Origin: Octopus bimaculoides | Taxonomy: Eukaryota | Assembly (NCBI RefSeq): GCF_001194135.2 | Contig: NC_069000.1 | Location: forward strand, 44,625,833-44,689,832 | Length of the DNA stretch: 64,000 bases | Direction: 5' to 3' | In this document: piece by piece, positions 11,613-53,371 of the stretch | How positions within the stretch are numbered: position 1 is the first letter of the stretch | Layout: every line of letters starts with the position of its first letter | Position numbers and translations under genes: made by a program | Notes under the pieces: model-generated | Seen by the model: the letters and a program-made list of their open reading frames with translations, nothing else | Databases searched by the model: none | Told to the model about the DNA's origin: nothing

Positions 11613-13114
11613 TTAACTGACGGGGTTCGGAAATAAGTGGTAGTTCCTTTTTAATTTTTCACAGGTCTTGCATATCCACTGCTTCTGCTCATCAGCAAGT
11701 TTATTGGGGTCGTGATCTGGGATCAGCGAACCAGGAAATGGTGAAAATCGACTCAGTTGGTCTCTGGGCAATGGTCTTTCACACGAAATACACATATAGC
11801 CCAAACTCTGCTTAGAATACATTTGCATTCCAGCATCAGCAGATTTTCCATAGTTAACAACAGAAGAAGAAAATGCAGAACTAGAAGACTCAACCTCTTT
11901 TTTCCGATGACCATGGTCAGTTTTTTTCCTAACATCTGGCACCGATTTTAGATAAGAGCAGTTTCCATCGCGGTCAATATTACCGCCAGGGACCCCGTAT
12001 GGATTCATGTAGGAGAAGTTTGACATTCGATTTTGCTCAGGGATTATACAAGGGAAGTTTATATCTCTGTCATTGATGTTGCGACTTTGGTTTTGGTTGA
12101 AGAATGGATGGATCACACCACCAGCCTTATCGTTTGGGTCTTTGTTCTGTGACTGAACGCCATAAGGAAACATAGATGCCCTATCAGCTGAAGTGACTTC
12201 AGACTGATAGGGATTCAAGCAGAACGATCCAGCTGCCATTCCACTGCCACCCCCTGGTGTTGTTGCTCCACCACCGCCACCACCACCAGTTGCTGCTGCT
12301 GCCGTTGCCACAGAGACATCCGCACCGCCCCCTGCACCAGTTACTCCACGGTCGGCAGGGAGATTTTTGTTTTGTTCCTGATCCATGCAAGGGAAGACCG
12401 GGCCCTTGTCATGCGTGTCTTTGTTAGGGATCAACGTCATACCTGGAAACACTGGTCCTCCTAAACCAGCCCTGTCCAGTTCGTTCTTGTCAGCAATCTG
12501 ATCCATACACGGGAACACACTTCCCCTTTCAGGAACTATTTTGTTAACTTGATTTCGGCTCATAAACACATTGTCTCGATCCGACATTGTCTTGCCATGG
12601 TTTTCTGATGACATGTTCGACTTGGAGTAAAGGTAGTCCGATTGCCTGTTCGTCACTGCCTTTTGGTTTGAGCCGACGTATGCAAAATCAGGAGACTGTT
12701 CCTCGTTAGGATTCGGTTTTGAGGTCTGCAGACGGTCGTCTTTATTTTTCATTTGCTCAACACAGTAACTGTCTGCATTTCCATCTGGGCTGCAGGTGTC
12801 TGTGTAGCGTAACAGAGAATCCTGTTCAGCCAAAGTTGACCCCTTACCACGTGGTTTCTGTCCTGTCTTCATCATTTGGACCATAAGGCGCTTTCTCTCC
12901 ACACGCATCTTGGAATTCATTCGCATGCGTTCCAACCGTTTCTGACGTTCATCAGGTGACTCATTCTCTAAACGGCGCCGTTGGTACTGTCGCATCTGTT
13001 CCAGTCTTTTCTCACGAGGATTTATGCAGCCACCACTAAACTGGTTTCCATCAGATTTCGACCCCTGGTCACAGTTTGGTCCACACATCATGTTATTAGC
13101 ACATTCATAACAAT
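11613..13114 (-). CDS. Terminal coding exon of UBL-STPR gene: 2 x STPR-like repeats, spacer, C-terminal CxxC...WICKTC putative zinc-binding motif
   Basis: Acceptor tttatctatttgcag|AT at 13114 is phase 1 and in frame with the 492-aa ORF (adds DCYECANN before MMCG). Stop ends at 11613. Repeats at 13031-12894; YMCISC...WICKTC at 11798-11661. Confidence 0.88.
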
Positions 13115-13849
13115 CTGCAAATAGATAAAATATATGAACATTTAATTACAATATAGACATAATTTAAAGTGTGTGTGTGTGTAGGAGGGAGTCTATATGC
13201 ATTGATTTTCCAGTCTCTCAACCTCTCTCTGCCTCTATTCACACACTCTCTCTCTCTCTCTCTCTCATGTATGTGTGCGCATATCTCACGTATACATGTA
13301 TAGTGGAAGACACTTGCCCCAGATGCCACGCAGAACCATGTGGTTGGTAAGCAAGCTACTTACCACACAGCCACAGACAGACAGACAGCTATATGTAGAT
13401 ACATGTCTGTGCGTATATATCATGTTTATTCTCCCCCCTCTCACTTATACACACATACCACCCTCTTACATACTGGTTAACTGGTATGTATGTGCATTGA
13501 AATCAACTTTTATCTATGCGAACTCAGCTGAGAAAACGTAAATATCGAGTTATGGTTACGCTCACAATTACCTTTATCTTTTGCTAACCTTTCAAAAATT
13601 TTAATGGTGATGTATAACTGTAGTAATAACATTTTGAATAACATATTTATATTTTACATAAAAATATCTATTATCATTTTGGTGGTAAATAATACAATTC
13701 GGATGACACACAAGCTTTTTTTTTTCCATAAAATTATTTTACAGTAGTTGCATTCAAAACATAAGACATTGTAATATTTTTCTTTCCTATTAAGTTAAAT
13801 AATAAAACATCAAACCTGTCAAATTTATTTACCTAAAACCCATCAAATT

Positions 13850-14200
13850 CCTCATAATCATCAGTATCTGTTTCTAAAAGTTCCCTCATGCATATCACAA
13901 GATTCATCACATATGGCATCATGGTAAGGATTCCAGTCTGGTTCTGGTGAATCGACTTCGACGTCGCTATTGTTCAGAATATCATCATTGGTACCATCCA
14001 TGGCATTAGAGATACCGCATTTTAAAAATGATTCTTTTCTACTTTAACTTTGTCCAATGCCTTTATAACAAAGAACACAGAGAACTTCAAGTGAGGCAGC
14101 ACGATTAGCTCCACCTTTTGTAAAAGATCTTTCTCCATTCAGTCATTCCATTGCTCTCTCACATTATCTTTAAATGGTTCCTCTTGTGCTTCCTCTTCTC
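13850..14200 (-). mobile_element. Decayed pogo/Tigger DDE transposase C-terminus in intron 2 of UBL-STPR gene
   Basis: PFKDNVREQWND*M, then frameshifted FTKGGANRAASLEVLC, KALDKVK, FLKCGISNAMDGTNDDIL. Confidence 0.75.
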
Positions 14201-14542
14201 ATTGCACATTTTTGTTTGGGCATTTGTCTCAATTTTTCCTCATCCTTTCTCTACTCACGGGTTGGACGGAGTTTATTGAGGCAGATTTTCAACAGCCAGG
14301 TGCCCTTTCCTGTTGCCAACCCTCACCTGTTTGTAGAATATTGGAAATGAATGATATTGCTTGCATGACACTGACAATCCTCTTACAACTACCACATGAA
14401 GTCAACACAAACATATGCACACCAACACACACACACACACATATACAGGATGGGCTTCTTTCAGTTTCCATCTACCAAGAGAGAAACATCATTACACAGT
14501 GGAAGAACTACAATAAATTCTTGATATCTTTATACTACTTAC

Positions 14543-15451
14543 CTTCATCAATAGAAGATATTGGTGGTGCGGAAAGACAATCGCATCCTTTTTTCCGCTT
14601 TTTGCAGTCTTGCGAGCATTTCATGTTAGCATAGCAGCCATCTTTCCCCATATTACAACTGTTCATGTAAGAATAATCGGACATACTGTTGGACATGGAT
14701 TTGTTTTGATCTGAAGAGTAGCAGCCAAAACTGTTTCCATCTCCGTTTGTGGTCACACGGTTCTGAATCTGGTTGAAAGACGGGAAGACAACTTCTCCGG
14801 TTGAACCCCTGTCCATCACATCTTTATTGGTATTGAGTGGTTCCATACAAGAGTAAGAGCCAGTCGAAGTTCCGTTCGAGTGGCTTCTGCTCTGGCATTG
14901 TCTACCGTTCTCTTTCATGCAAGGAAAATCTCCGTTGCAACATAAATTCTCTTGACGACACGACTTCCCACACGGGGCCGAGCAACAGGGGCTGTCTTGC
15001 ATGCTGCTACAACTTTTGTCATTCTGACACATGTAGCCGCAATCTTTATCCATGTTCTTGGAGCTTAATTTCATCGGGAAACTACCACCGTCCCGGTTAA
15101 GCATCGACTGGTATTGAAATATATTCTCGTTATCTTTCATCCGTCGCATCAGAATCGAAATCGCCTGCGACTTTTTTTTCCCTTTCTGAGAGTTTCCCAA
15201 CAGTTGTGCTATGGCTTTTTTCCTCTCTTCGCGTCGCCTCGCGTTTTCTCGCATGCGTACCAGCCTTTTCTGTCGATGCTCGGGGGGCTCGGTTGCCATG
15301 CGCTGGTGCTGATACCGTTTCATGCGCAGCAGTCGCTTTGTGCGCTGTGTATCGGTCTCTGTATGAAGACGCCTTCGTTGCTTCAATCTCATTTTTAGTA
15401 ATTTTCTGTCTTTTGGCGTCATCATCTCAGCTGTAGCGTTGTCATAGTAAT
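14543..15451 (-). CDS. Second coding exon of UBL-STPR gene: 3 x 23-aa STPR-like repeats plus Cys/Ser/Asn-rich spacer
   Basis: Acceptor tttgttttgtag|AT at 15451 and donor GAAG|GTAAGT at 14543, both phase 1; 909 nt, open throughout. Repeats at 15428-15222 followed by KKAIAQLLG, paralogous to RKAIAQILG in exon 1. Confidence 0.88.
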
Positions 15452-16823
15452 CTACAAAACAAATGACACAACAGAAACAAACATTAAGAAAATATGTTAG
15501 AAGAATAAAAAGAACGACAGAAAACAATTCTTACTAATTTTAACCCAAGGCTAGCAGTTCTGATGTGAAAGGGCAGGTTGATTACATCAACCCTAGTACA
15601 TGACTGGTACTCAAGATCCCTAAAGGATGAAAGGCAAAACTTGACCTCAGAACTTAATGCCAAAAGAAATACTGTTAAGCATTTTGACCAGCATTCTAAT
15701 GGTTCAACCATTCAACCGGCACACTACCTTAATAATAATAATAATAATAATCCTTTCAACTGAAAGTAGAAGGCCTGAAATTTGGGGTAAGGAGACTAGT
15801 TGATTACACCGGCCCCAGTGTTTCACTGGTACTAAATTTATCAACCCCGAAAGGATGAAAGGGAAAGTCGACCTCAGTGGAATTTGAGCTCAGAACATGA
15901 AAACGGACAAGCATTTTGCTCAGCGTGCTAAGGATTCTGCCAGCTTACCACCTTAAATAATAATAATAATAGTTATAGGGTGTGATGGTAATGGCTGCAG
16001 TAGAACTGTGGTAGTGATGTTGGCTTTAGTGTAGTAGTGGTTGTAGTAGTGCTGTGATGGTGGTGTCGGTGACGGTAGTGTTAGGGAGGCTGGGAAAGGT
16101 TACTGTTGTTCCACCCACCCCTGTTTTATTTATTTATTTATTTATTTATTGCAAAAAGAATCTCTGGGCAGATGGGAAGGAGAGGAAGCGTGCAGAAGGA
16201 GGGGGAGGGAGAGGAAGCAATCAGGATGCAGTGGCAGTTAATATCTATGTTGCTTAGCAACAGATCAGTCACTCCACGCCATCACCACTCCAATATACAC
16301 AACTACATCCCAATTCAGATATCACACACACACACACACACACACAAGCAGGCATACACACACAGACAGCCAAACATGTAGATACATGCACACACACACA
16401 CACACCTAAACATACACAAGATATTATCACCTCTGCAAGATAAGAAGCCGGTGGATTGAAAATACAGGCAGGAGAGAGAGAGAAAGAAAAGGGGTAGATG
16501 GAGAAAGAGATAGAGAAAGAGTGGGGGAGAGAGAGTGAGAGAGAGAGAGAGAGACAGAAAGGAGACTGGTAAGAGAAGTATGTATGGAAATACATCAATA
16601 TGTATATGAATGCAAATGTGTGTAGATGAGCGTGTGTGTGTGTGTGTGTGTGTATGCGTGAGTATATATATATATATATATGTATGTATGTACATATATA
16701 TATGTGTGTCTGCATGCGTAAATAAAAATATGTGTGTATATGTGTGTGTTTGTAAATGAATGTGTGTGTGTGTGTAGATGAATGTGTGTGTGTGTGTAGA
16801 TGAATGTGTGTGTGTGTGTGTGT

Positions 16824-17676
16824 NNNNNNNNNNNNNNNNNNNNNNNNNNNNNNNNNNNNNNNNNNNNNNNNNNNNNNNNNNNNNNNNNNNNNNNNNNNNN
16901 NNNNNNNNNNNNNNNNNNNNNNNNNNNNNNNNNNNNNNNNNNNNNNNNNNNNNNNNNNNNNNNNNNNNNNNNNNNNNNNNNNNNNNNNNNNNNNNNNNNN
17001 NNNNNNNNNNNNNNNNNNNNNNNNNNNNNNNNNNNNNNNNNNNNNNNNNNNNNNNNNNNNNNNNNNNNNNNNNNNNNNNNNNNNNNNNNNNNNNNNNNNN
17101 NNNNNNNNNNNNNNNNNNNNNNNNNNNNNNNNNNNNNNNNNNNNNNNNNNNNNNNNNNNNNNNNNNNNNNNNNNNNNNNNNNNNNNNNNNNNNNNNNNNN
17201 NNNNNNNNNNNNNNNNNNNNNNNNNNNNNNNNNNNNNNNNNNNNNNNNNNNNNNNNNNNNNNNNNNNNNNNNNNNNNNNNNNNNNNNNNNNNNNNNNNNN
17301 NNNNNNNNNNNNNNNNNNNNNNNNNNNNNNNNNNNNNNNNNNNNNNNNNNNNNNNNNNNNNNNNNNNNNNNNNNNNNNNNNNNNNNNNNNNNNNNNNNNN
17401 NNNNNNNNNNNNNNNNNNNNNNNNNNNNNNNNNNNNNNNNNNNNNNNNNNNNNNNNNNNNNNNNNNNNNNNNNNNNNNNNNNNNNNNNNNNNNNNNNNNN
17501 NNNNNNNNNNNNNNNNNNNNNNNNNNNNNNNNNNNNNNNNNNNNNNNNNNNNNNNNNNNNNNNNNNNNNNNNNNNNNNNNNNNNNNNNNNNNNNNNNNNN
17601 NNNNNNNNNNNNNNNNNNNNNNNNNNNNNNNNNNNNNNNNNNNNNNNNNNNNNNNNNNNNNNNNNNNNNNNNNNNN
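16824..17676. other. Assembly gap inside intron 1 of UBL-STPR gene. Other gaps at about 567-609, 7433-7536, 9383-9787, 29950-29959, 42359-43033, 47788-47811, 51225-51234, 52037-52424, 60385-60594.
   Basis: Runs of N. Confidence 0.99.
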
Positions 17677-18724
17677 ACAAGGCTTTGGTCAGCCCAAAAT
17701 TCCACGTAGCAGGGCTGAACCTGGAACCAAGTCATTGGGAAGCACACTTTTTACCACACAGCCACACCTTAATAATAATAATAATCCTCACCATTGTTGA
17801 ATGTCCACTTTTCCATGCTTGCACAGGTCAGATGGAATTTACTGAGGCAGATGTTCTAAGGGTGAATGCCCTTCCTGTCACCAACCCTCACCTGTTTCCC
17901 AAGCAAGGTAATATTTTCATGAGAAACTGCAAACAAACAACCTCGCATGTATGATGGTGATGCTCATTTACAACCATCATGTAAGAGTATGCGCAAATGC
18001 ATGTATGTGCACATGTGCGCTTTTTACATGTCGGTTATGTGGTGTCACGTAAAAGGCACCTTTCGAGCATTGAGCCTCACAGTGTCAAAGTGGCCGATGC
18101 CAGTGGCACATGAAAAGCTCCTTTCGAGTGTCGGGCCTCACAGAAGCAATAAAAAATGACCGAGACCTTGGCAGATACTGGTGTCATGCAAATGGCACCC
18201 ATGCCAGTGGCACGTATAAGCACTCATTACACTCTCAGAGTGGTTGGCGTTAGGAAGGGCATCCAGCCATAGAAACCATGCCAAATCAGGAGTTTGGTGC
18301 AGCCTTCCAGCTTACCAGCCCTGATCAAACTGTCCAACCCACGCCAACATGGACAATGGATGTTAAATGACGATGATGATGATGATGATATATATACATA
18401 TATATATAAACACAAGTGTGTTTTAAAATTTACGACAGCTGTTTAGATAGAATTTTTGGTAAAATCTTAAACAGGTGAGATAATACCATGAAGGCAAATC
18501 CAATCTGTGTTGGATAGATTCATCATCATCATCAAGATATTATCTCACTTGTTTATAACTTTATCTGAAGATGGTAGATTATACGTTATGACATAATCTA
18601 TGAATACATCTATAAAATTCTACTGAAACAGCTGTTGGAAATTTTTAAACCTATTTATGCTCCTTTTTTTTTTGTGCCTATGTTGCACCTAGAACTAGTC
18701 CAAAGTCAGATCTACAGCTTAAAT

Positions 18725-18937
18725 AAGGCAGCGAGCTAGCAGAAACGTTAGCACACCGGGCGAAATGCTTAGCGGTATTTTGTCTGTCTTTAGGTTCTGA
18801 GTTCAAATTCCTCAGAGGTTGACGTTAGCTTTCATCCTTTCAGGGTCAATAAATTAAGTACCAGTTGCGTACTGGATCAATCTAATCGGCTGGTCCCCTT
18901 CCCAAAAATTTCGGGCCTTGTGCCTAGAGTAGAAAAG
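18725..18937 (+). mobile_element. SINE of the most abundant local family (ggcgagctggcagaa...ctttcatcctttcggggtc...aagtaccag...ccttgtgcct)
   Basis: Dozens of related copies across the window, e.g. 7580-9380, 15540-15960, 28440-28605, 35060-35760, 55100-55250, 61100-61410. Confidence 0.75.
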
Positions 18938-21179
18938 ATCTACAGCTTAAACTGGATTTGGTATTTACATATCCACAATATCCCACAAACACCTGATACC
19001 TTCATGCTTGTTTTTACCTCACTGTGAACCTGATGGTATTGCACCTAGCCATTTGTGGCGTCCTACATCTTGATGTACCTGGATTCTATTGAATCCTATA
19101 GCTAATCTATATGTGTGTGTGTGTTGTTAATATGCTTCTATAATGCAAAACATAACCACTTATTTAGGACTGCATATGCCCTATAACATTCCAATACATA
19201 CACCCAGTAAATATATTCGTGTTAAAATACACCTGAACACATAATGTAGGTGTGCAGGCTGTAATAATAAAGATGATTGATTTAATGACTTTAATCTATT
19301 TTCCAAATAAAGGATCTTTAATTTCACACATCAAAAGCAAAAAGACTGCTCACGTCATGAAAGTGCACACACACACATATATGCAAACAAACGGATGCAC
19401 ACATACACACACAATATATATGTAATTTTGGGGACTAATGGGTATAAGTGAATTAATGTTGAGTAAAGCACTTTCACAGTATGGGGCTACCTGGTGTCAT
19501 CCATGGTTGGAGTATATTTTTCTGCTGGATTTACATCAGGAATTCTGCAGTGTTGGTTGAGGTAATAATAATCGATGAAGGAAACAGAGGATAGATTTGG
19601 TATTAGACTTTATTCAGTACGACAATTGTTTCGACCCATCCTGCAACTGTCCATTATGGGTACGATTTTGTGCATGAATCTCCACAGTTTGTGGAGATGC
19701 ATAATCATCATCATCATTTAACATCTGCCTTCCATGCAGGCATAAATGATATATATACATACATACATATATATAAGGAGAGAGAGAGAGATGGTGCCAT
19801 ATAAAAAGCACCAAGTACACTCTGTAAAGTGGTTGAAATTAGGAAGGGCATCCAGTCATAGAAACCCTGCTGAAGCACAATTGGAGCCTGGTGCAGCTCT
19901 CTTGCTGGCCAGCTCCTGAAACCATCCAACCCATGCCAGCATGGAAAGCAGAAGTTAAATGATGATGATGATGATACACGTACATACTTACAGATATATA
20001 AAAATCTGCCCCAATGAATGCTGTCTGCAAGCATGAAAAAGTGGATGTTATAAATGATGATGATGGTATTCATATCATCATCCTCTTTACGTCTGTTGTC
20101 CCCATGCTTGCATGGGTCGGACAAGTACTGTCCAGTACATCATACTCCCATCACTTGCAGTATTCCTTTGTCATAATTTAACCCCTTAACTCTTAACATA
20201 AAGCCACCACTCTTAGGGTGTATAGCCTTGCAAGTTGTGCGACTACCTCACTAGTGCCTGCAGCACATAAAACAAAACACCCAGTACACTCTGTAAAGTG
20301 GCTGATGTTAGGAAGGGCATTCAGCTGTAGAAACCATGCCAAAGCAGACCAGACATTGATGTAGTCTTTGGCCCAAGCAAATCCTGTCAGATCATCCAGC
20401 CTATAACATTGTGGAACATGGACATTAATCCTTTATAATACTTTATTAATCCATATTGTTTCAAACTAACCATGGCCCTATCTCATAAATTCGAGATTCC
20501 AATGATGTAACTGTTTATATTTAAAGTAACAGTGCGGGGTAGGTGTGAGAGGCCAGATCTGGCCAATTTAATCATAAAATGGAACAAACATCTGAGCCAG
20601 ACATGGCTTGTTTAAACGTTGTTCCCTCGAACTGGCACAGGTCATTAGAGTGTTGAGTAGAATGCCTTGTGGTATTTCTTCCAGCTCCCACTCTGTGCTC
20701 TGAGTTCAAATCTGCTTTTCATCCTTTTGGGGTTGATAAAAAACAAGTCTCAGGTGAGAGTGATCGACTGTTAGAATTATCAGAGCATCAGATGGGATAC
20801 CTTGTCATTGCAGTTCCAGCTTTATGTCTTGTGAGTTCAAATCCCACCCTGAGACTGAGAAATAGTGACATCTTCTGACAGAAGTTGCGAATAAAAGATA
20901 GTGCATCCATCCTCATTTATCACAGAAGTTTGGTTCCAAAAACACTGATAAAAGAATCATCTCCATGCGTTTTGTAAATGGAATGAATAATAAATTCACA
21001 TATTTTTATTGATCATCTCTACATTTTCCTGTACACTTGTTTGTGTATTTTTGCTAGGATTAAGTGCCTTCATACAAATGAATGGTAGAATCACCAGCAC
21101 AAACTTCGTGGCTCAGAGCAGCAAAGTTTCTACCATCATCTAATTATTTTCATCATCTCTACCTTCTCCCATATCAAAT

Positions 21180-21500
21180 ATATTCCTCGGTTAGAATCAG
21201 GACGCCTTGGTATTTTCTCGGTTCACAGGTCTCATGTTGATGGGTGTGAGTATATAAATCCATATAATAAAAATCCACAGCCTCATACCCGGTCATGTGA
21301 GTACAAGTGATGGTCAGTGCATTTTGGAGAGCTGAACCTCATGGGTGGTCACTGGAGAATTGCTTTTGTGGCACAAACAGAACATTGGACTGATCACCAA
21401 CCTGTGTTATCACAATTCAGTCCATGATAAGCGTAACACAATCCACAAGTGAGCATACTGTTTCACCACCGATCAGTGTTGAATGAATCAGTGATAACCA
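21180..21500 (-). mobile_element. Possible highly decayed Tc1-like DDE fragment
   Basis: GGETV followed by frameshifted CGLCYAYHGL (cf. GGSVMVWGCFAYHG) and PRRPDSN (cf. WPxRSPDLNP). Confidence 0.35.
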
Positions 21501-23225
21501 ATGCTTGCATATATCTTCTATCTTTTACTTGTTTCAGTCATTAGACTGCGGCCATGCTGGGGCATTGCCTCGGAGAATTTTTGGCAAACAAGTTGATCCT
21601 AGTACTTACTTTTCTTTTTAGCCTCCAATCTTCTATGGAAAATATGTCTGGCCATGGGGGAATATTACCTTACTTGGAAACATGTACAGTTGGGGACAGA
21701 AAGGTCATCCAGCTGCCTCAACAAATTCAAGCCAACCCATGCAAGCATGGAAAAGTGAACATTACAATAATGATGATGCACACATATAGTTTAAAGGTGT
21801 GTGGCTATGTGATTAAGGTGTTTGCTTCCCAATTGTGTGGTTGTAGGTTCAATCCCACTGAGTGGCACCTAAGGTAGGCCTAGGTATTTTGTCTTTTTAT
21901 TCTTTTACATGAGTCAGTCATTTGACTGTGGCCATGCTGGAGCATCGTATTTAGTCAAATAAATCAACCCCAGGACTTATTCTTCGTAAGCCTAAAACTT
22001 ATTATGTCGATCGCTTTTGCCGAACTGCTAAGTTACGGGGACGTAAACACACCAACATCGGTTGTCAAGCGATGGTGGGAGACAAACACAGACACACAAA
22101 CATATACATACATACAATGGGCTTCTTTCAGTTTCCATTTACCAAATCAACTCACAAGGCTTTGGTCAGCTCGGGGCTATAGTAGAAGACACTTGCTGAA
22201 GGTGCCACACTGAGGGACTGAACCCAGAACCATGGGAGGCAAGCAACCTACCACACCTGCACCTATGTTTAGAAATATGTCTGTGTGCTTGTTTAAATTT
22301 GCACCGCTCTCAAATTTGCTCAGCAACACGCAGTGATGTTATTGTCATTTCCCCATATCAATGGATCACCTGCTAACTTTGTAATCTTGAAGATGTGTGG
22401 AAATAAGATGTCTAGCATTTGTAAAACACTGGTGAGGGTTAGCAACAGGATGGGCATTCAGCTGTCAAAAACTTGCCACAATAATATATTCATCAAACTC
22501 ATGCTGGCATGGAAAACAGACATAAAATGAACCAACAAAATATACGTTTGAGAATGTCTATATACACACACATACGTGTGTGTATACATACATATATATA
22601 TATTTTTTCTTTTATTTGTTTCAGTCACTTAACTGCGGCCATGCTGGAGCACCACCTTTAGTTGAACAAATTGACCCTAGGACTTATTCTTTGCAATCCT
22701 AATACTTACTCTTTTAGTCTTTTTTGCCGAACCGCTTAGTTACAGGGTCGTAAACACATTAACATCGGTTGTCAAGACACACAAACATATACATATGATG
22801 GGTTTTCAGTTTCCATCTACCAAATCCAATCACAAGACTTTGGACAGCCCGGGGACTGAACCTGGAACCATGTGGTTGGGAAGCAAGCTTTTTACCACAC
22901 AGCCACACTTATAATGTTAATGTTTGTTTTTACGCTCAGTTATTATAAAAGCAATTTTACATTAATCAGATGGGTTACTCTACATATATGTGGGTGTGTG
23001 TATATATATATATTTGTATATATACATATGCATATATTTGTATATTTATATACACACATATGTATATATGCATAGACATATATATGTTTATACACATGAA
23101 CACAGATGTACATTATATGTATAGCAATATATATATATATATACATGTACATACATACATACTATATAAGCATTAACATAATGAGCTGTAAACATTATCC
23201 TATCATTACAATTTGAATTACTCAC

Positions 23226-25140
23226 CTTGACTAATGAGTGGCGAAAATGAAGACCCCAACATGTATTCAAGCTTCCTCTCTAGGGTCCCTACATCTTCTA
23301 ATTGCCCAAAGTCAGCTCCTGTTTCGCCCGGACTGAATGTGGATTTTTTCTTCTTGCGCTTCATTGCTTTCGGTGTAAATGAACAGGATGAATTACCAGT
23401 CTTCTGTTGACCACCAATGTCCAGTAATGTCAAATTGTTACTTTGGTCGCTCTGGCCAGCTTTCGCCGCCGTTCCTTTGCTCGATGGATCAAGTGAACTT
23501 TGAATGGCATCCAGGTTTAACAGATCTTCACTTCGAGGAGTCATTATCTCAGTTCGTACACAGTCAACTTGGGTTGGCTTATAGTTAGGCTTGAGATAAG
23601 GAAAAGCCCCATCTCTATCAGAGAGGCCCAAACCTTGAGCTGCACTAATATAAGAAAATCCACCATCTCTTTCATTCGTTCCAGTTTTACCATTCTCTTC
23701 ACTGATATTACTTTGGGGTGATGTCAGGCAATCAAAGCCCATTTCTTTATCAGTCATGTCTTTATTTTGGTTAGAATGCAAGTGAGAAAATATTCCAGAA
23801 GTATCTGCTTTATCTGCCATACCCTGTTTGTTGAGGCCATCCTTTTCCATAGTTGAGTCCATACAAGGTAAAACAGCCCCACCAGCCGATCCGCGCTCCA
23901 TCCCAGGTTTGTGTCCACCTTGCTGGTTCCTATTCTGGCACTGACTGTTGTTCTCTTTCATGTAAGAGTATTCTCCATTGGAATTTTTCTGACTTGAATC
24001 TAGATAAGACAAATCTCCTTGCCTGTTGTTCTTGTCACATTGGTTGGTGAACCCTGATCCATCCTGGGTATTACAAACATTTTTATCATTTTGACTTAAA
24101 TAGCTGAAATCATCTTGTCTATCATTTGGGTCTTTCTGGCCTTGTTGCTCCATGGATGGAAATCCTTGATTACGACCTGATATATTCTTTGAGTTCATTC
24201 TCATGAAAGACAGGTTGTCGCCGGCTTGTCTCATCAGTAATTCAGCAGTTGAGGTCTTTTTCCGCCCCCTCTTACAAGAAGATCCCAATATCTGTGCTAT
24301 AGCTTTTCTCCTTTCGACGCGCATTCGCGCATTTTCTTTCATACGTATCAGTCTTTTGTGTCTACCATCTGCGTCTTCGGTCTGCATTCGATTCCGTTGG
24401 TTTTTTTGAAGTCTCTGCAAGCGCCTCGATCGATCAGGCTCACTTTCGATATCAATCCGTCGATGTTGATTTATCCTTAACCGCATCAACCTAGCTTCCC
24501 TCTCCGCTAAAGTTTCTCGGGCACGTTTAGCCCGTTCGTAAGCTTTCATCTGCTCCAGCCGCATCTGTTTGTCTTCCAGTGACATATTAGCGTAACGTTT
24601 CCTCTGATATTCTCTCTTTCGGATCTTTTTTTCGCTTCTTTTCTCGTCGTCAACTGAAAACGATCGAGATTGTCTATCGATCCGGCAGTTACCGATCTGA
24701 TGATCAGAATAGCAGCCATAGCTATAGTTGCCATCACAAAAAATCTCGGAAGTGGTGTTACAGTCTAAACATCCGTTTGAAGAATTGAGAAAAACATCCG
24801 GATCGCTGTCATACAAGCTTTCGAAGTTACTGAGGTCAGTTCGGTCGCAGACCTTCCGCGTTTTCGTAGTCTTAGCATGTATTTTACATTCGATGTAGTT
24901 GTTTGTGGGCTTTATGTTCTGTTCGGAGAGAGGGAAATACCATAAGAGGATTTTACCGTTGTGGGTCACACAAAAGTTCTTGCTATCGTAGATAGTTCGA
25001 CTAAGGATGTCACAGAGCGTCTGGTGAGGTTGAAAATCGAGAGTAAAATCACGTCCTGAATCGATTCTGAAGCAAATCTTCATTGCTGCTCCACTACTCG
25101 CTTGTCCTTTCGACATATCACTATAGTTGCAATCAGACAT
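23226..25140 (-). CDS. First coding exon of UBL-STPR gene: ubiquitin-like domain, 4 x 23-aa STPR-like repeats, low-complexity spacer, basic NLS-like KRKKKK
   Basis: 640-aa ORF. Residues 20-90 (MKICFRIDSGRDFTLDFQPHQTL...GKILLWYFPLSEQNIK) align by eye to ubiquitin ([23 protein letters not shown]...GKQLEDGRTLSDYNIQ). Four exact 23-aa repeats at 24585-24310. Phase-1 donor CAAG|GTGAGT at 23226/23225, just before the ORF stop. Confidence 0.88.
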
Positions 25141-25400: not shown

Positions 25401-27814
25401 AAAATAAATCAGCCGTAGAAAATATAACTTCTTCAAATGTTCGTTTTCATGGAAGTAACCTAAAAGAAAATTATTTTAACGATGTTGTTATAATGTAATT
25501 AAACTTTAAAGCTTTATAAAGGAGGCATTAGCACTTACAATAGAAAGTTTAGAATTTGTGAAAGTATCGTTTTTCGTCGAAACCATTCCGTGTTGTATAT
25601 AAACCCTAGGCAGCTCTATGGAAAATGGCTGAATGTTATCAAAGTTTCGATCTCCAAATCCTAAATTTCCTCAGAAATAGAAAAAAATAAGTATTTTCTC
25701 TTCAGTATTTTCTTCTTTTGAACCATTCTTGTTTTTTACTTGTAACGCTGGCATCAGAAATACGTTTTTCCATGTGTTTATTAACGAAAATCCCAAGCTA
25801 TTCGACCCACAAAATAACAAACAAATTAGAATCGAGCGAAATAAGAAACATTTATTTCCTGGGAAAATTGCCAAAGCTTAAATTCCACGTAATTTAATCT
25901 CACCATTATTTATTATAAGTTTCTCATTATAAACTAACTATATTTTCCACGATGGAAATTATCTATAGTCACCATTGTCTCGATATAGCAATGAAGTCAT
26001 TCTCTTCTATGGCTATTACTATTATTAGTAGTAGTAGTATCTGTTCCAGTTTCCTCGCATTAACATAGATCGTTATCAGTGGAAACTGCTTCGTTCTCGT
26101 GACTCCCACTACAATCTTATATATTTACGTATGTCTCTGTAGATGTATGTATCTATCTCTCCATATGTAGATATAGCATTCTCGCTATACATACTCCCTC
26201 CCGCCTATCTTTCTATCTACCTGCCTACCTATCATTTATACACACATATATACATGTATATTTATATATACGACCTTGCTTCACTCCTTTGTTCATCTGT
26301 GTCTGGTCGTAATTAGACTATATATATAATTATAATATATATATATTATTATGTCATATATCATTTTATATATGCATACATATCTATCCTGTGTGTCGTG
26401 GGAGGAATAACAAGCATGGTTTTGTATTTCTAGTCTTTGTTGATTTTAAAACAAAAACCAGATTTTAAATAAAATAATTCCGAATCAATTTAGTTCCGAG
26501 TATTTATTTTACTTCTTTTTTTTTTTCCTTTTTCTTGAGATTAATTATCAAGTTTGCATTACTTATTACTATTAAATTGCTACAGTATTTTTAATTAAAT
26601 CGTAATACATTTGTTGTGAACGTATTTCTATATTTATAAACAATACACGCACATGGGGAGGGAGAGAGAGAAAGAGATGTGAGTGTGTGTGTATCTCTCT
26701 TTCTCTCGCGCGCTCTCTGTTTATACTAACATTTACGAACCAGCAAGGGGTTCTCAATGTGGTCGCTTCACCTACCAGCTAGAAATAGCAGCCAAATCAC
26801 CCCTCTCCTTCCCAGTCACTGCCTACTGTCTTTAAAAAAGTAGAAAGCATTGAGAATGGAATCGTAGTTACGCTATGTTTGAAAATAATAGATGGATGGC
26901 CATGACTAGAGCAACGAGAGCTCATTAATCTGCCTTATCTAAGCTGGTCTATATCCACTGACCTTCCTATATATGTATATCATCATCATCGTGTACACAC
27001 ATGTATACATGAGATCCAAGTTCCGATTTTTCGAGCCCTGATGGTCTGGAATCTCTTATCTGCATTAATTTTCGAGCAAGGACGTCAAATTCCCGTGGCC
27101 ACCAGACTAGTTTACTTAGTGCCTTGCATTTTACTAATAAATCAACAGGTATTTATACCAACACACGGGTACCTGTATTTCATTTAATATTTGATATTTG
27201 TTTAATTCAGAGTGTGTTGACCAAGGTGACCATCCCTGGTTCAGAAATATCTAATTCAGGTCTTTGGAAACAATGGTTCCAGGAAATTGATGTACCAATG
27301 TGTATGTGTGTAGGGTGTTCGGGCTAAATTTGACAGTCTGCATAAAAGGAAAAGAAAATAATATCTCATTCAAAAAATAAGAGTATTTTTTTTAAAATCC
27401 AAAAATGTCAACTAGATTATGAGCGATAAAAATTAACTCAAAGTATCTGTCCTCATCTTCCACCACAGTCTCAAGACAGCTTCAGAACTGCGTCACTGTC
27501 ATCATCATTATCATCATCGTTTAACGTCCATTTTCCATGCTGGGGTCTGGGATGCCAGGTGGCTGCACCAGGCCCCAATCTGATCTGCCAGTGTTTCTAC
27601 AGCTGGATGCCCTTCCCAACGCTAACCACTCCGAGAGTGTAGTAGGTGCTTTTTACGTGCCACCAGCACAGGGGACGGAGGAGCTGGCATCGACCACGAT
27701 TGGATGGTGCTTTTTATGTGCTGCCGGCACAAAAGCCAGTCAAAGTGGCACTGGCATCGGCCACATTCGGATGGTGCTTTTTACGTGCTGCTGGCACAGG
27801 GCTCACAACTACCT

Positions 27815-28140
27815 CTAGTAAAATCTTGGTGCTGCAGGTAGAACGGTTGGCGTCTTTCTCAGCTGCTCGGGGGAATTGGGAAACTGGAGCTGGTGAAGTC
27901 CTAGGAATTCACCAACAACCACTTCCGACTCTTTCCAGAGATATAGCAAGGAGCTGAATCCTGCAGCCACACATGTGGCCTTCCAGCAGCAATTCTCTCC
28001 AGCCAGGGTTTGATCACAGTCTCCAGAAACTTCACATAGCTATTTGAACTGAGTCTGAGGCCATGTTCAATGATTGTAGGGTGGCATGACATCACCCAAA
28101 GACCATCACAGTTTGGGGTAACTTGGTTTTCACAATGTCC
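27815..28140 (-). mobile_element. Decayed IS630-Tc1-mariner (ITm) transposase DDE fragment
   Basis: KTKLPQTVMVFG, EHGLRLSSNSYVKFLETVIKPWLERIAAGRPHVWLQDSAPC, EKDANRSTCSTK; frameshifted. Confidence 0.75.
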
Positions 28141-29439
28141 ATGTCACAACTTACAGCCTCCGGTGCAAATCATCATGATACAAGTAACTCTTTTCCAATA
28201 TTCAGATGGCTTCCAGACCATCATTTCAGCTCTCTTTTTTTCTCCACTACAACTTTAATCTTTATATTCTCCAACACTGTTAACATCAAGCTGTTCCTGA
28301 AAAAAGAAGACAAAAAAGAACAAATTTAACCCAGACACCCAGCATGTATAATATATATACACATAAAAGCACCTTTTGAGTGTTGGGTCTCACGGCAATA
28401 GCAAATGACTGAGGCCCTTGGCATTATGTTGTGCTTGAAAGGCAGCGAGCTGGCAGAAACATTAGTACGAGTTCAAATTTTGCCAAGGTCGACTTTGCCT
28501 TTCATTCTTTTGGGGTCAATAAATTAAGTACCAGTTGCATACTGGGTCGAACTAATTGATCTCCCCCAAAATTTCAGGCCTTGTGCCTAAAGTAGAAAAG
28601 ATCATGTTATGCTTGAGAAGAAGACTCAACAACATTATTGCACATCTCTTAAATATAGAACTGTAAGACCCATCTTGCCAAGTAAAATTGCAATCATGGC
28701 AGATACTGGTGTCACACAAATGGCACGTAAAAGCACCCATTACACTCTCAGAGTGGTTGGTGTTAGGAAGGGGCATCCAGCCATAGAAAGCCATACCAAA
28801 TCAGACTGGAGTCTGATGCAGCTTGCTAGCCCTGGTCAAACCATCCAACCCATGCCAGCTTGGACAACGGGTATTAAATGACGATATATATGTACATGTG
28901 GGTTTGATGGTACGAATAGGGTTGATAGAACTCGAAACATCATCACCACCATTTAACATGTGTTTTCTGTGCTTGCAAGGGTTGGACATGTCAACAGGAG
29001 GTGGTGAGACACAGGAGCTGTACCAAGCATCACTGTCTGGTAAAGTTTCAACAGCTGGGTGCCCTTCCTTGTGTCCAACTTGGTGAGGGTCGGTGACAGA
29101 AGGGCGTCCTGCCATAAAAATCTGTCTGACCCGCACAGAGATGGGGAAGTGTCTTCTACTACAGCCTTGGACTGACCAAAGCCTTGTGAGTGGATTTGGT
29201 AGACGGAAACTGAAAGAAGCCCATCATATATATATATATACATATGGCAAATGAAAGACGAAAGATGGAATATACGAGAATGTATTAGTAATCACAATTG
29301 TTTCGACACATCTAGCATCGATCTCCCATGGATGGGACTCGCAACGACTGGTTCAGGAGCATCTGGCAGTATCTCGTCAGGTGATACAGGTGTAAACCAG
29401 TCATTTTATTATCCATTATATATATCAACTGCAACAGCA

Positions 29440-31465: not shown

Positions 31466-32215
31466 TTAAAATACTGTGAGAAGGGCAAATACTCCGTAGA
31501 CTAGAGCACATGGATAGGCAACAAGGAGCTGCTGGTGATCCATTGCTAGGGCAGAGACAAACAGCTTTGAGGCCGAGAAACTACACCAGAAAACTGCCAT
31601 GACAGTTAGGAATATACCAAGGGCTCCCTTCAAAGAGATCATGACAGATACAGACGATAGGATAACCATTGGTAATAGACAATAGCCTAATACACTTATT
31701 GTACATCCAGACGAAACACCAGTGATACTCATCAAGTTTAACAGACCATACATGGCAAGGCATCCTACAACCCCGATACCATAGATGTAACCAAAGTGCA
31801 GTTTGCCAGACAGCATCAAAGCAGCACCGAAAGCAATGCAGAATACTAAAGGTCCAGCCAGATCAGTGTCCTTCATTATGTTGTGGTCAGCATCTTGTAA
31901 CGGGTTCAATACGGCCATTGTCTTTTGTGTGATGTGGTCAAAGTTAATGCCCAATTCTTCCATTAGTGGTGGCTCATCCTCAAAACTGTCTGGTGCTGTA
32001 GTCTGGTAGACAGTCGGTTCCGGTGTCATAATAGAACCAAAATATGGATCTTGACTGTTGGTCGTGATGTATTCTGTAGTGGTGGTCTGGCTGTAGACAA
32101 ACTGACCGAACTGAGGTTCCTGGCCAAAGCCTTGAGTGTCCATGTTATATCCAGAACTTTGGTTTTCATAGTAGTTGGATGAGTAAAATTCTCCTTCTTG
32201 GCCGAAAGAAGACAT
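31466..32215 (-). CDS. YIPF5: Yip1-domain Golgi/ER membrane protein, YIPF5/YIPF7 family; single coding exon
   Basis: 249-aa ORF with family motifs [67 protein letters not shown]. Context ccaaaATGt. Polypyrimidine acceptor ttctttccag|A at 32237 shows an upstream 5'-UTR intron. Confidence 0.95.
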
Positions 32216-32517: not shown

Positions 32518-33794
32518 TTAAGGTGATCTAAAAACTTTCCATCAAAATTTATGTTCCAAACACCAGCTTAAATATTTACAGCTATTTTACTGAACTCTTT
32601 GTCATTTCCAAAATTTATTGAAACCGTTGGGCCTCAGAGAGGCAATGACAAAAGACCAAGACCTCTGGAGATCTGCTGTGATTGAGAAGACCCGGCAAAT
32701 AAAGTGAGTGCACAGCTGTAACCTACACCAGTGTTGCATAACCTGCCCCAGCCCACTCAAAAGTACCTTGGATCGTAGAGCGACATGCCATGCTTGAGGA
32801 GACTTATTGAGTCAAGTACATTAAAATCAAATGGAAACTGTAGTTGTGATTCCCGTGCCGGTGGCACGTAAAAAGCATCATCCGAACATGGCCGATGCCA
32901 GCGCTGCCTTGACTGGCTTCCATGCCAGTAGCATGTAAAAAGCACCAACCAATTGTGGTCGATGCCAGCCCCCTCTGGCCCCTGTGCTGGTGGCACATAA
33001 AAAGCACCCACTACACTCTCGGAGGGGTTGGCGTTAGGAAGAGCATCCAGCTGTAGAAACTCTGCCAGATCAGACTGGAGCCTGGTGCAGCCTCCTGTCG
33101 AACCGTCCAACCCATGCCAGCATGGAAAGCGGACGTTAAACGATGATGATGAGAAGCAGACGTATGGCAGCAAAAAGGTTAAACTAAAACGTTGAGGGTT
33201 AAATGCAAGAAAAATGCAGCACAAATCAGTTTGACTGGACATTGAATAAGAGAAATATTTTTGAAAATGGAGCCAAATATGGCCCTCAACTTGAATACAT
33301 TAAGGTACTTTGATACGGAATTGAAAGAAGAAATGGAAGATCAAACTAGTGAAGTAAGGAGAAAAGTTCCGAGCAATTATCTTGGATTTAATGAAAAGCA
33401 ATCACTGACAGATATACAAGAAGAAATAGCTGACATTGTTTATCAGAGTCCTTCACTGGTTTAATTGTAGATAAACCAAGTGGTAGAGACATGTGAGGGA
33501 CATTAGCAGGTTATTGTAGCCATCAGAGTGGTATAGATCTGTGGAAGGTGGCCAGTAGTGACTGTAGTTAATCCATGTGGTATAGATATGTGATGGGTAA
33601 GTACATGTGGCTGGTGGTTGTAGCTAACCTAAGTGATATGGATATGCAATTGCAAAACACTTGTGGCCGAAAGCTAAATGAAAGAGTACAGTCATATTAT
33701 TTGGTAAGTACTAGAGGATAATAATAGATAAACCAATGGTACAGACATGTGATAGATAAATACTATTGAGTAATTATAGCTAGATTATAGCTAA

Positions 33795-49564: not shown

Positions 49565-50077
49565 CTTTATAATTACATCTCAGTCCATAATAATTCTTTG
49601 CACAACCATCAATACAGTAGCCATTGTAAGGATAGCAGCTTCCATGGAGGCAGTGACCACATTTCTGACAGATTTTACCATGTTTGTAATATCCAGCTTG
49701 GCAACCAGTATAACCAAGTCCATCACCGTAACTGTGACCAAGATAATATTGAGGAGCATAACCTTGACCATGACCATGACCATAACCATGATGGTGGCCA
49801 TAACCTAATCGGCGACCATGACCAAATCGGCGACCATGACCAAATCGGCGACCATGACCAAATCGGCGACCATGACCAAATCGGCGACCATGACCAAATC
49901 GGCGACCATGACCAAATCGGCGACCATGACCAAATCGGCGACCATGACCAAATCGGGGGCCATAACCATGATGACGACGATAACCATGATGACGACGATA
50001 TGGACGACCGTATCGAATTCCATGGTGATAACCGTGGCCATAATGTGGTGAGTTACCATAACCATATCCATAAGAAG
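49565..50077 (-). CDS. His/Gly/Arg-rich (RRFGHG)n exon plus one EGF-like module
   Basis: 513 nt, ttatttgcag|CT ... AAAG|GTAGGT, phase 1-1; about 8 copies of an 18-bp unit; ends GCQAGYYKHGKICQKCGHCLHGSCYPYNGYCIDGCAKNYYGLRCNYK. Confidence 0.88.
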
Positions 50078-50244
50078 CTGCAAATAAATTCAGACGATAG
50101 AATCAGATATTATCATTTTGGGATATCATAAATAAATTATGATGCTATAAAAACTCTCCCTACCACACTCTAGCTACCTTTACCTGAACCTACAGGTCAT
50201 CACTCTGTCTCTCATCCGTCTCTTATTTACTGTATCATATATTG

Positions 50245-52537: not shown

Positions 52538-52599
52538 GTACATTTTCTCAAACAATAAAGCAACAAAAATACTAATAACTCAGAGTGTTAGTAATTTAC

Positions 52600-53223
52600 C
52601 TTTATAATCACATCTCGGTCCATAATAGCTTAATTGACAACCCCCAGTGCAGTAACCACTGTAAGGGTAACAGTATCCATGGAGACAGTGACCACATTTT
52701 CGGCAGATCTTGCCATATCTGTAATATCCTGCATCACAACCAGCATAACCATAACCGGGACCATATCCATAACCTTGACCATAACGAAGTCCATAACCAC
52801 CAAAGCCATAGCCATGTCCATAACCGTGACCAAGATGACGACTGTAGCGGCGGCCAGGACGACCATAATGGTGGCCAGGATGACCGTAGGGGTAACCACC
52901 TCTGGAACGATAACCATGACCATGAAGGAAACCTTGGTGGTAACCATAAACATGACGACGACCATAACCATAACCACCACCGTGACGATAACCATGACGA
53001 TGACCATGACGATGACCATGACGATGACCATGACGATGACCATGACGATGACCAGGACGATGACCAGGACGATGACCATGACGATGACCAGGACGATGAC
53101 CAGGACGATAACCATGACGATGACCATGATGATGACCATGACGATGACCATGACGATGACCATGACGATGACCATGACGATGACCATGACGATGAACATT
53201 ACTGTAGCCGTGGCCATAGGATC
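52600..53223 (-). CDS. His/Arg/Gly-rich (HRHG)n exon plus GYG-rich segment and one EGF-like module
   Basis: 624 nt, ttatttacag|GA ... AAAG|GTAAAT, phase 1-1; 18 four-residue HRHG-type units at 53194-52979; ends GCDAGYYRYGKICRKCGHCLHGYCYPYSGYCTGGCQLSYYGPRCDYK. Confidence 0.9.
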
Positions 53224-53371
53224 CTGTAAATAATTGCAAACAAATTAATTAGATTTCATTAACAAAAACACTGTCATTTCTTTACTACATAGCCATATAT
53301 ATATGTGTGTGTGTTATATTATGCTTGTATACATAGACATATTTAATCTATTATTATCATTGTCATTATCA

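What the first reader, a model, noticed from the sequence alone, without database searches (positions are those of the whole stretch)
24870..25083. Divergent ubiquitin-like domain at the N-terminus
MKICFRIDSGRDFTLDFQPHQTLCDILSRTI aligns without gaps to ubiquitin [30 protein letters not shown], and GKILLWYFPLSEQNIK aligns to GKQLEDGRTLSDYNIQ. There is no C-terminal di-Gly, so it would be an integral, non-conjugatable UBL. A UBL fused to DNA-binding repeats could link chromatin to proteasome, p97 or UBA partners (inference).
Basis: partly seen in the sequence, partly recalled or inferred. Interest (0 to 1): 0.72.

Follow-up and report, generated by a model that had tools for sequence, protein, structure and literature searches.

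The report
Possible ubiquitin-like domain, octopus STPR protein
The first ~70 residues of an octopus-only DNA-binding (STPR-repeat) protein form a strongly conserved small domain whose only detectable resemblance is to ubiquitin, but that resemblance stays below every significance threshold, so the ubiquitin-like fold is likely rather than shown.

Summary
That is aa 20-90 of Octopus bimaculoides LOC106870383 (XP_014771913.1), a 3-exon, 1441-aa "STPR domain-containing protein".

It is the most constrained part of exon 1. dN/dS is 0.02-0.04 across three Octopus lineages, so it is a translated and probably folded domain.

The UBL call is not proven:
- Pfam gives no hit.
- hhalign against 20 verified UBLs gives probability 3-6% (P about 0.015).
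- The best single-domain PDB hit has E about 0.2, and shuffled or reversed controls reach E 0.3-0.6.
- Two AlphaFold runs have pLDDT 41.
- The best Foldseek hit has E 0.22.

Every weak signal nonetheless points to ubiquitin:
- 11 of 14 PDB sequence hits and most of the Foldseek top 50 are ubiquitin-like.
- The predicted ββαββ-β order matches ubiquitin element by element.
- Eleven of 11 ubiquitin core positions are hydrophobic.
- The first 30 residues beat 20,000 shuffles.

There is no di-Gly. The Leu8/Ile44 recognition patch is Asp/Thr, so a proteasome or UBA link is disfavoured.

No relatives were found outside Octopus.

Verdict: a plausible (about 55%) integral, non-conjugatable UBL, probably a protein-interaction module. 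Modest interest.

The parts
24870..25083 (-). Candidate ubiquitin-like (beta-grasp) domain, aa 20-90 of the protein (MKICFRIDSGRDF...YIECKIHAK)
   Evidence: sequence and frame; dN/dS 0.02-0.04. PDB hits mostly ubiquitin-like at E about 0.2; predicted strand/helix order bb-a-bb-b, pLDDT 41; hhalign P about 0.015; no Pfam hit.
25084..25140 (-). N-terminal leader, aa 1-19 (MSDCNYSDMSKGQASSGAA), Ser/Gly/Ala-rich, carries an indel between species
   Evidence: The annotated start codon at 25140 matches the gene call in GCA_001194135.2.
24622..24869 (-). Basic stretch followed by an Asp/Cys/Tyr-rich linker, aa 91-173
   Evidence: No Pfam hit. Its only database match is a repeat-summed hit to a bacterial repeat protein, judged spurious.
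24277..24621 (-). Five tandem 23-residue STPR repeats of exon 1, aa 174-288
   Evidence: PF21107 at 28.4 bits against a cut-off of 27. FMBP-1 STPR (PDB 5d23) at E 3.5e-4. The 23-residue period can be read directly from the sequence.
23226..24276 (-). Low-complexity tail of exon 1, aa 289-638, ending at the donor site CAAG|gtgagt
   Evidence: exon ends; homologous tails in exons 2 and 3.
14543..15451 (-). Exon 2: second STPR module plus low-complexity tail, aa 639-942
   Evidence: Acceptor ...ttgtag|AT and donor GAAG|gtaagt.
11613..13114 (-). Exon 3: third STPR module, low-complexity tail, C-terminal CxxC...CxxC motif and stop codon

Best explanation
Residues 20-90 form a small folded domain at the N-terminus of an Octopus-restricted nuclear protein. 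That protein carries three STPR arrays, which are AT-rich, major-groove DNA-binding repeats. The domain most likely has a highly divergent ubiquitin-like beta-grasp fold. It is built into the chain, with no di-Gly, so it cannot be conjugated. It lacks the Leu8/Ile44 hydrophobic patch, so it probably does not dock on proteasome, UIM or UBA receptors. I infer that it works as a protein-protein interaction or self-association module that brings partners, or other copies of the protein, to STPR-bound DNA. This would resemble the ubiquitin-like oligomerisation domain of SATB1. Shown: the domain exists, it is under strong purifying selection, and it is fused to STPR repeats. Inferred: the fold and the function.
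For: Constraint across three Octopus lineages: 12-16 synonymous against 1-3 non-synonymous differences in 71 codons, dN/dS 0.02-0.04, against 0.10-0.24 for the rest of exon 1 from aa 91.

PDB sequence search: 11 of 14 hits, and 16 of 19 with the 3-sequence profile, are ubiquitin-fold chains. Several cover the domain end to end, for example query 19-79 against chain 4-68. Shuffled and reversed controls gave no ubiquitin hits.

The first 30 residues against ubiquitin beat all 20,000 shuffles. For the whole domain, 39 of 20,000 shuffles reach the score.

hhalign against 20 UBLs, all verified as PF00240, aligns 58-61 colinear columns at 26-28% identity, P 0.014-0.017. With a UBL HMM, 222 of 20,000 shuffles reach the score.

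Two independent AlphaFold runs give the same element order, E-E-H-E-E-E. The element positions map onto ubiquitin b1, b2, a1, b3, b4 and b5 under that alignment.

The Foldseek top 50 is dominated by ubiquitin, ISG15 and ubiquitin variants.

In the alignment, ubiquitin core positions I3, V5, I13, L15, V17, I23, V26, L43, L50, L56 and I61 correspond to I, F, F, L, F, L, I, V, L, L and I.

Precedents for integral UBLs on chromatin proteins are SATB1 (PMC3351170) and UHRF1 (PMC6242706). STPR proteins are said to be fused to various other domains (PMC4856987).
Against: No test reaches significance.
- Pfam ubiquitin-clan models give nothing at E<=10.
- hhalign probability is only 3-6%.
- The UBL HMM score is 2.1 bits.
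- The PDB single-domain E of about 0.2 is matched by random controls at 0.3-0.6.
- The polyubiquitin hit at E 0.0018 is inflated, because the same weak match is summed over four repeats.
- The C-terminal half alone is not above chance against ubiquitin.
- AlphaFold pLDDT is 41 and pTM 0.26. Foldseek TM is about 0.35 with rmsd 11-16 A, so the models are not compact beta-grasps.

All the positive signals derive from one and the same sequence similarity, so they are not independent. Only four near-identical orthologues exist, so there is no covariation or deep profile. The function is pure inference.
Confidence: 0.5

Rival explanations
1. It is a lineage-specific globular domain with a different or new fold, and its likeness to ubiquitin is chance. 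The likeness would be concentrated in an N-terminal beta-hairpin plus helix, a pattern many alpha/beta domains share.
For: All profile and fold tests are below threshold. Random controls get PDB hits of similar E. The C-terminal half is not significant alone. An exhaustive search of 1.84 billion representatives found no relative outside the Octopus cluster. AlphaFold cannot fold it with confidence.
Against: The sub-threshold hits are nearly all from one fold family, are colinear, and run domain end to domain end. Controls hit unrelated proteins. The predicted secondary-structure order and 11 of 11 core positions match ubiquitin.
Confidence: 0.3
2. It is a beta-grasp domain, but from another branch of the superfold (PB1-like, Ras-binding/RA-like or similar) rather than the ubiquitin family proper. 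It would act as a head-to-tail oligomerisation or adaptor module.
For: The C-RAF RBD and RIAM/lamellipodin RA domains appear among the weak Foldseek hits. The RING1B RAWUL domain appears among the PDB sequence hits. The ubiquitin recognition patch is absent.
Against: Pfam gives no PB1, RA or RBD hit. The best-scoring matches are ubiquitin, ISG15 and designed ubiquitins, not those families. The one Lys on strand 1 (K21) is Gln in the other species. By general knowledge of PB1 domains, a conserved Lys there would be expected for a type-B PB1.
Confidence: 0.1
3. One reading: a Rad23/Dsk2-type UBL that docks the DNA-bound protein on proteasome, p97 or UBA/UIM partners.
For: This holds only if the fold is a UBL. 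N-terminal UBLs of shuttle factors have the same position and size (general knowledge).
Against: In the alignment, ubiquitin Leu8 and Ile44 are Asp27 and Thr59. The loop equivalent to Glu51-Arg54 is Leu-Trp-Tyr-Phe instead. No UBA, UIM or other ubiquitin-system domain is found in the 1441-aa protein.
Confidence: 0.07
4. It is not a functional domain. It would be a mis-annotated 5' region or an untranslated leader, with translation really beginning further downstream.
For: No transcript or peptide data were available here. The k-mer searches with the exon-1 ORF returned nothing.
Against: The region lies in frame in a 1.9-kb ORF. There are 12-16 synonymous against 1-3 non-synonymous changes between species. 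The same start is annotated in three Octopus genomes, and the ORF is present in an independent Logan contig.
Confidence: 0.03

Closest known systems
Ubiquitin family and integral (type-2) ubiquitin-like domains, Pfam PF00240, Ubiquitin clan
   Same: About 70 residues. Predicted b-b-a-b-b-b order. Hydrophobic residues at all 11 ubiquitin core positions checked. Gly-Lys before strand 4 and an L-S-x-x-N-I motif at the colinear place. N-terminal position in a multidomain protein.
   Different: No family profile match and hhalign probability of 3-6%. The loop after the helix is 4-5 residues shorter. No di-Gly. The Leu8/Ile44 patch is replaced by Asp/Thr. An aromatic Leu-Trp-Tyr-Phe loop is present.
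SATB1 N-terminal ubiquitin-like oligomerisation domain (PMC3351170)
   Same: An N-terminal, non-conjugatable ubiquitin-like domain on a protein that binds AT-rich DNA. That domain also escaped sequence-based recognition until its structure was solved.
   Different: No sequence relationship was detected. The DNA-binding part here is STPR repeats, not CUT domains plus a homeodomain. Oligomerisation was not tested here.
UHRF1 N-terminal UBL (PMC6242706)
   Same: An integral N-terminal UBL in a chromatin-binding multidomain protein, working through protein-protein contacts.
   Different: The UHRF1 UBL is a clear PF00240 member and works together with a RING domain and an E2. The octopus protein has no RING or other ubiquitin-system domain.
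STPR proteins: Bombyx FMBP-1, human ZNF821 (PMC4856987; PDB 5d23)
   Same: Tandem 23-residue basic repeats. PF21107 scores above its cut-off and there is a direct match to the FMBP-1 STPR.
   Different: There are three separate STPR arrays, one per exon, each followed by a long low-complexity tail. An N-terminal UBL-like domain is not reported for the family (one search found no such paper). No orthologue was found outside Octopus.

Membership tests
Ubiquitin family / Ubiquitin clan (PF00240 and relatives) | Significant match to a family profile | tested here: not met
   No Pfam family at E<=10 for aa 1-100. hhalign against 20 verified UBLs gives probability 3.2-5.6%, P 0.014-0.017. A home-made UBL HMM scores 2.1 bits, and 222 of 20,000 shuffles reach that.
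Ubiquitin family / Ubiquitin clan (PF00240 and relatives) | Beta-grasp fold: a mixed sheet of b1-b2, then a helix, then b3-b4, then b5 | tested here: inconclusive
   Two AlphaFold runs give the right element order but pLDDT 41 and pTM 0.26-0.27. Foldseek's best hit has E 0.22, probability 0.41 and TM about 0.35. The top hits are mostly ubiquitin-like.
Ubiquitin family / Ubiquitin clan (PF00240 and relatives) | Hydrophobic core positions (ubiquitin I3, V5, I13, L15, V17, I23, V26, L43, L50, L56, I61) | tested here: met
   Under the hhalign alignment these are I22, F24, F32, L34, F36, L42, I45, V58, L65, L71 and I76. This depends on an alignment that is itself not significant.
Conjugatable ubiquitin-like modifiers (type 1) | C-terminal di-Gly exposed at the end of the protein or by processing | tested here: not met
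   The last strand is followed by KIHAKTTKTRKVCDR and about 1350 further residues.
Proteasome/UBA-binding UBLs (Rad23, Dsk2, parkin type) | Leu8-Ile44-Val70 hydrophobic recognition patch | tested here: not met
   Leu8 corresponds to Asp27 and Ile44 to Thr59 in the alignment. The Val70 equivalent is uncertain, Cys85 or Lys86.
STPR domain proteins (PF21107) | Profile match above the curated cut-off | tested here: met
   Exon 1 scores 28.4 bits against a cut-off of 27. The whole protein scores 65.8 bits over 4 stretches. The FMBP-1 STPR chain 5d23_A matches at E 3.5e-4.
STPR domain proteins (PF21107) | Tandem repeats of exactly 23 residues, rich in basic residues (PMC4856987) | tested here: met
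   aa 174-288 reads as five consecutive 23-mers: RKREYQ...MRLE, QMKAYE...ARLM, RLRINQ...RRLQ, RLQKNQ...KRLI and RMKENA...LGSS (sequence).
STPR domain proteins (PF21107) | Binding along the major groove of AT-rich DNA | not testable with these tools
   Known for BmSTPR only (PMC4856987). It needs a binding assay.

The most novel reading that the evidence does not exclude
The domain is an Octopus-lineage invention. In this reading a ubiquitin unit, possibly from a polyubiquitin repeat, was captured in front of an STPR gene. One species still reads GGGA-MQICF, reminiscent of the ...RGG-MQIFV junction of polyubiquitin. The unit then diverged beyond profile detection while coming under very strong purifying selection. 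It would thus have become a new, non-ubiquitin-system interaction or oligomerisation surface on a cephalopod-specific chromatin protein.
Probability: 0.2. Interest if true: 0.45.

Novelty: new member of a known kind. Interest (0 to 1): 0.3.

Why it matters
If the fold is confirmed, this would be the first STPR protein reported with a ubiquitin-like domain. It would also be a further case, after SATB1, of an AT-rich-DNA binder carrying a cryptic N-terminal UBL. That suggests a testable route to self-association or partner recruitment for a cephalopod-restricted, triple-STPR chromatin protein that is currently annotated only as 'uncharacterized'.

It is also a useful caution. What makes the region credible as a domain is its evolutionary constraint, not the alignment.

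Integral UBLs are common in eukaryotes, so the finding is of modest general interest.

Tried and rejected
- **k-mer protein search.** The exon-1 ORF and aa 1-175 both found nothing. With the full 1441-aa protein as query, only the Octopus cluster itself came back.
- **Exhaustive phmmer of aa 1-175 against 1.84 billion representatives.** It returned only the Octopus cluster and one bacterial repeat protein. That protein matched the Asp/Ser/Asn-rich linker, not the UBL, through 10 summed repeats, so I rejected it as compositional.
- **tblastn of the N-terminus against the window.** There is no second copy, so the STPR modules of exons 2 and 3 lack the domain.
- **Exact look-up of the 640-aa ORF.** It is not on record, because the annotated product is the spliced 1441-aa form.
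- **AlphaFold.** I ran it on aa 1-115 alone and on aa 15-100 with the three distinct orthologue sequences. Both gave pLDDT 41.
- **Foldseek on both models.** Nothing scored at E<=0.001.
- **Adding secondary structure to hhalign.** Probability rose only from 3.0 to 5.6%, and global mode was worse.
- **Seeding AlphaFold with an alignment of known UBLs.** I decided against this because it would be circular.
- **The polyubiquitin hit at E 0.0018.** I rejected it as evidence because the score sums four copies of the same weak match.
- **Literature search for STPR together with 'ubiquitin-like domain'.** It returned only unrelated potato papers.

Full report
**What is at the coordinates**

On the minus strand, an ATG at 25083-25081 opens MKICFRIDSGRDFTLDFQPHQTLCDILSRTIYDSKNFCVTHNGKILLWYFPLSEQNIKPTNNYIECKIHAK. 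This lies inside a 640-aa ORF at 23218..25140 that starts 19 codons earlier, with MSDCNYSDMSKGQASSGAA.

The window is Octopus bimaculoides chromosome CM046620.1 (GCA_001194135.2). This was established by an exact look-up of the neighbouring Yip1-family gene. The same look-up shows a gene called from window 25140 with a 1441-residue product.

That product is XP_014771913.1, also LOC106870383 and UniProt A0A0L8IEM2, 'STPR domain-containing protein'. It has 94-96% identical orthologues in O. sinensis (XP_029647615.2) and O. vulgaris (CAI9737178.1). An exon-1 ORF also occurs in a Logan contig of run SRR11869384.

Mapping the protein back on the window gives three exons:
- exon 1: 25140..23226
- exon 2: 15451..14543
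- exon 3: 13114..11613

The splice sites are consensus (CAAG|gtgagt, ttgtag|AT, GAAG|gtaagt, ttgcag|AT) and both introns are phase 1. In exons 1 and 2 the in-frame stop lies two codons beyond the donor. That is why exon 1 reads as a stand-alone 640-aa ORF.

**Architecture**

Pfam finds only STPR (PF21107). Exon 1 alone scores 28.4 bits and the whole protein scores 65.8 bits over four stretches. The exon-1 array matches the FMBP-1 STPR chain of PDB 5d23 at E 3.5e-4. It reads as five exact 23-residue repeats, aa 174-288.

Exons 2 and 3 are paralogous modules, each an STPR array plus a low-complexity tail, 30-34% identical to exon 1. Neither they nor anything else in the window has a second copy of the N-terminal segment.

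[quoted passage not shown] STPR proteins are reported to be fused to various other domains (PMC4856987).

**Is the N-terminal segment a real domain?**

Yes, as far as sequence evolution can tell. Codon alignments of exon 1 from O. bimaculoides, O. sinensis and the Logan species were compared by region:

| Region | Synonymous differences | Non-synonymous differences | dN/dS |
|---|---|---|---|
| aa 20-90 | 12-16 | 1-3 | 0.02-0.04 |
| linker, STPR array and tail | | | 0.10-0.24 |

The three amino-acid changes are K21Q, S28A and I76L. Under the ubiquitin alignment these are two surface or loop positions and one conservative core change. The segment is therefore translated and is the most constrained part of the exon.

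**Is it ubiquitin-like?**

The first 30 residues align ungapped with ubiquitin 1-30, with 7 identities and BLOSUM62 score 37. None of 20,000 shuffles of that half reaches its local score. For the whole domain, 39 of 20,000 shuffles do.

The second block (GKILLWYFPLSEQNIK) is not above chance against ubiquitin alone: 4298 of 20,000 shuffles reach its score. Against a UBL HMM it is marginal (989 of 20,000), although it aligns at the colinear place.

Against all PDB sequences, 11 of 14 hits are ubiquitin-fold chains: designed ubiquitins, di- and polyubiquitin, and the RING1B C-terminal region. The best has E 0.19 and covers query 19-79 against chain 4-68. With the 3-sequence profile, 16 of 19 hits are ubiquitin-like. 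The tetra-ubiquitin hit at E 0.0018 is only four summed copies of one weak match.

Two shuffled queries and one reversed query gave 0-1 hits each, none ubiquitin-like, but at E 0.33-0.59. So an E of about 0.2 is not significant by itself.

The remaining tests gave:
- Pfam ubiquitin-clan models: nothing at E<=10.
- hhalign of the Octopus alignment against 20 UBL domains: 58-61 colinear columns at 26-28% identity, P 0.014-0.017, probability only 3-6% with or without secondary structure.
- An HMM built from those 20: 2.1 bits, reached by 222 of 20,000 shuffles.
- Two AlphaFold runs, on aa 1-115 alone and on aa 15-100 with orthologues: pLDDT 41, pTM about 0.26.

Both AlphaFold runs give the same element order: strands at aa 20-26 and 30-36, a helix at 42-49, then strands at 56-60, 63-67 and about 82-88. 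Under the alignment these fall on ubiquitin b1, b2, a1, b3, b4 and b5.

Foldseek finds nothing significant. The best hit has E 0.22, probability 0.41 and TM about 0.35, with rmsd 11-16 A. Most of the top 50 are nonetheless ubiquitin, ISG15, NEDD8-complex or ubiquitin-variant chains. The N-terminal hairpin-helix fragment fits best.

Eleven ubiquitin core positions are all hydrophobic in the octopus sequence under the hhalign alignment.

These signals are consistent with each other, but they all stem from the same sequence similarity. I put the beta-grasp/UBL fold at roughly 55-60%.

**Relatives**

An exhaustive phmmer search of aa 1-175 against 1.84 billion representatives found only the Octopus cluster and a spurious repeat-summed match of the linker to a bacterial repeat protein. 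The k-mer searches found nothing more. The domain, and the gene as a whole, are so far known only from Octopus. That is also why no deep profile or confident model could be made.

**How it probably works**

This part is inference. The domain is internal, with no di-Gly and about 1350 residues following it, so it cannot be a conjugated modifier.

Under the alignment, the Leu8/Ile44 patch that Rad23-, Dsk2- and parkin-type UBLs and ubiquitin use to bind proteasome receptors, UIMs and UBAs is Asp27/Thr59. The loop equivalent to ubiquitin Glu51-Arg54 is an exposed Leu-Trp-Tyr-Phe. The protein has no other ubiquitin-system domain.

A protein-protein interaction or self-association module on a multivalent AT-rich-DNA binder is more likely. 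The closest analogy is the cryptic ubiquitin-like oligomerisation domain of SATB1 (PMC3351170). UHRF1 shows another mode, E2 recruitment, but that needs a RING domain, which is absent here (PMC6242706).

**Comparison and novelty**

Membership of the ubiquitin family is not established:
- the profile match was tested and not met;
- the fold test was inconclusive;
- the core-residue pattern was met.

Membership of the STPR family is met. No paper linking STPR with a ubiquitin-like domain was found.

If confirmed, this is a new and very divergent member of a known kind, an integral UBL on a DNA-binding protein, in a new combination (UBL plus triple STPR) restricted to a cephalopod lineage. Interest is modest.

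Noticed in passing
window 11613-25140, minus strand: The gene consists of three paralogous exon modules, each an STPR array plus a long low-complexity tail with recurring F-P-C/S-M-D/E ... N-K-D ... D-R peptides. Each of the first two exons ends at a consensus donor with an in-frame stop two codons later, so intron retention would give truncated proteins of 640 aa and so on.
   Followed up: partly
window 24870-25140, minus strand: Synonymous divergence in the UBL codons is about 3-fold higher than elsewhere. dS is 0.38-0.55 there, against 0.09-0.23 in the rest of exon 1 from aa 91 and 0.11-0.15 in the upstream and intron flanks. Fisher P is about 0.003 in each of three non-independent species pairs. 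The changes are mostly third-position C/T. This is unexplained. It may be a counting artefact of two-fold sites or a local mutational effect.
   Followed up: partly
window about 11616-11800, minus strand (C-terminus of exon 3): A C-terminal CxxC ... CxxC motif (YMCISCERPLPRDQLSRF...QWICKTCEKLKRN) looks like a small zinc-binding module. Pfam gives no hit.
   Followed up: no
window 24622-24800; 15420-15451; 13070-13114, minus strand: A short Asp/Cys/Tyr-rich motif precedes each STPR array: FCDGNYSYGCYSD, DYYDNATAEMM and DCYECASNMMCGPNC. Its function is unknown.
   Followed up: no
window 24649-24825 (aa 106-164): The linker gave E 5e-7 to a 1748-aa bacterial protein made of about 10 near-identical repeats (P0002). 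The match is 24% identical and summed over 10 stretches, so I judged it compositional.
   Followed up: partly
window 31466-32215, minus strand: An intron-less 249-aa Yip1-domain (YIPF-like) gene, PF04893 at E 5.8e-10. It is annotated in the assembly and was used to identify the organism.
   Followed up: partly
window 52580-53239, minus strand; similar repeats at about 49600-50130: A 219-aa ORF made of (G-H-R-H)n and Gly/Tyr-rich repeats, ending in a Cys-rich segment (CDAGYYRYGKICRKCGHCLHGYCYPYSGYCTGGCQLSYYGPRCDY). Pfam gives no hit. A second histidine-repeat region lies 3 kb away.
   Followed up: no
window 60364-60825, minus strand: A fragment with a reverse-transcriptase zinc-binding motif (zf-RVT, E 2e-5, 25.6 bits, just under the 27.5 cut-off), interrupted by an assembly gap. 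It is probably a retroelement remnant.
   Followed up: no
window 19714-20124, 27537-27960, 28552-29136 and 32757-33242: Several ORF translations share peptides such as FPCWHGLDG and LDALPNANHSESVVGAFY on both strands, which indicates copies of one interspersed repeat family.
   Followed up: no
(tool behaviour): The k-mer protein search did not return the 96%-identical O. sinensis protein when queried with the exon-1 ORF or its first 175 residues. It did return it when queried with the full 1441-aa protein. Negative results from that tool for this gene should be read with care.
   Followed up: partly
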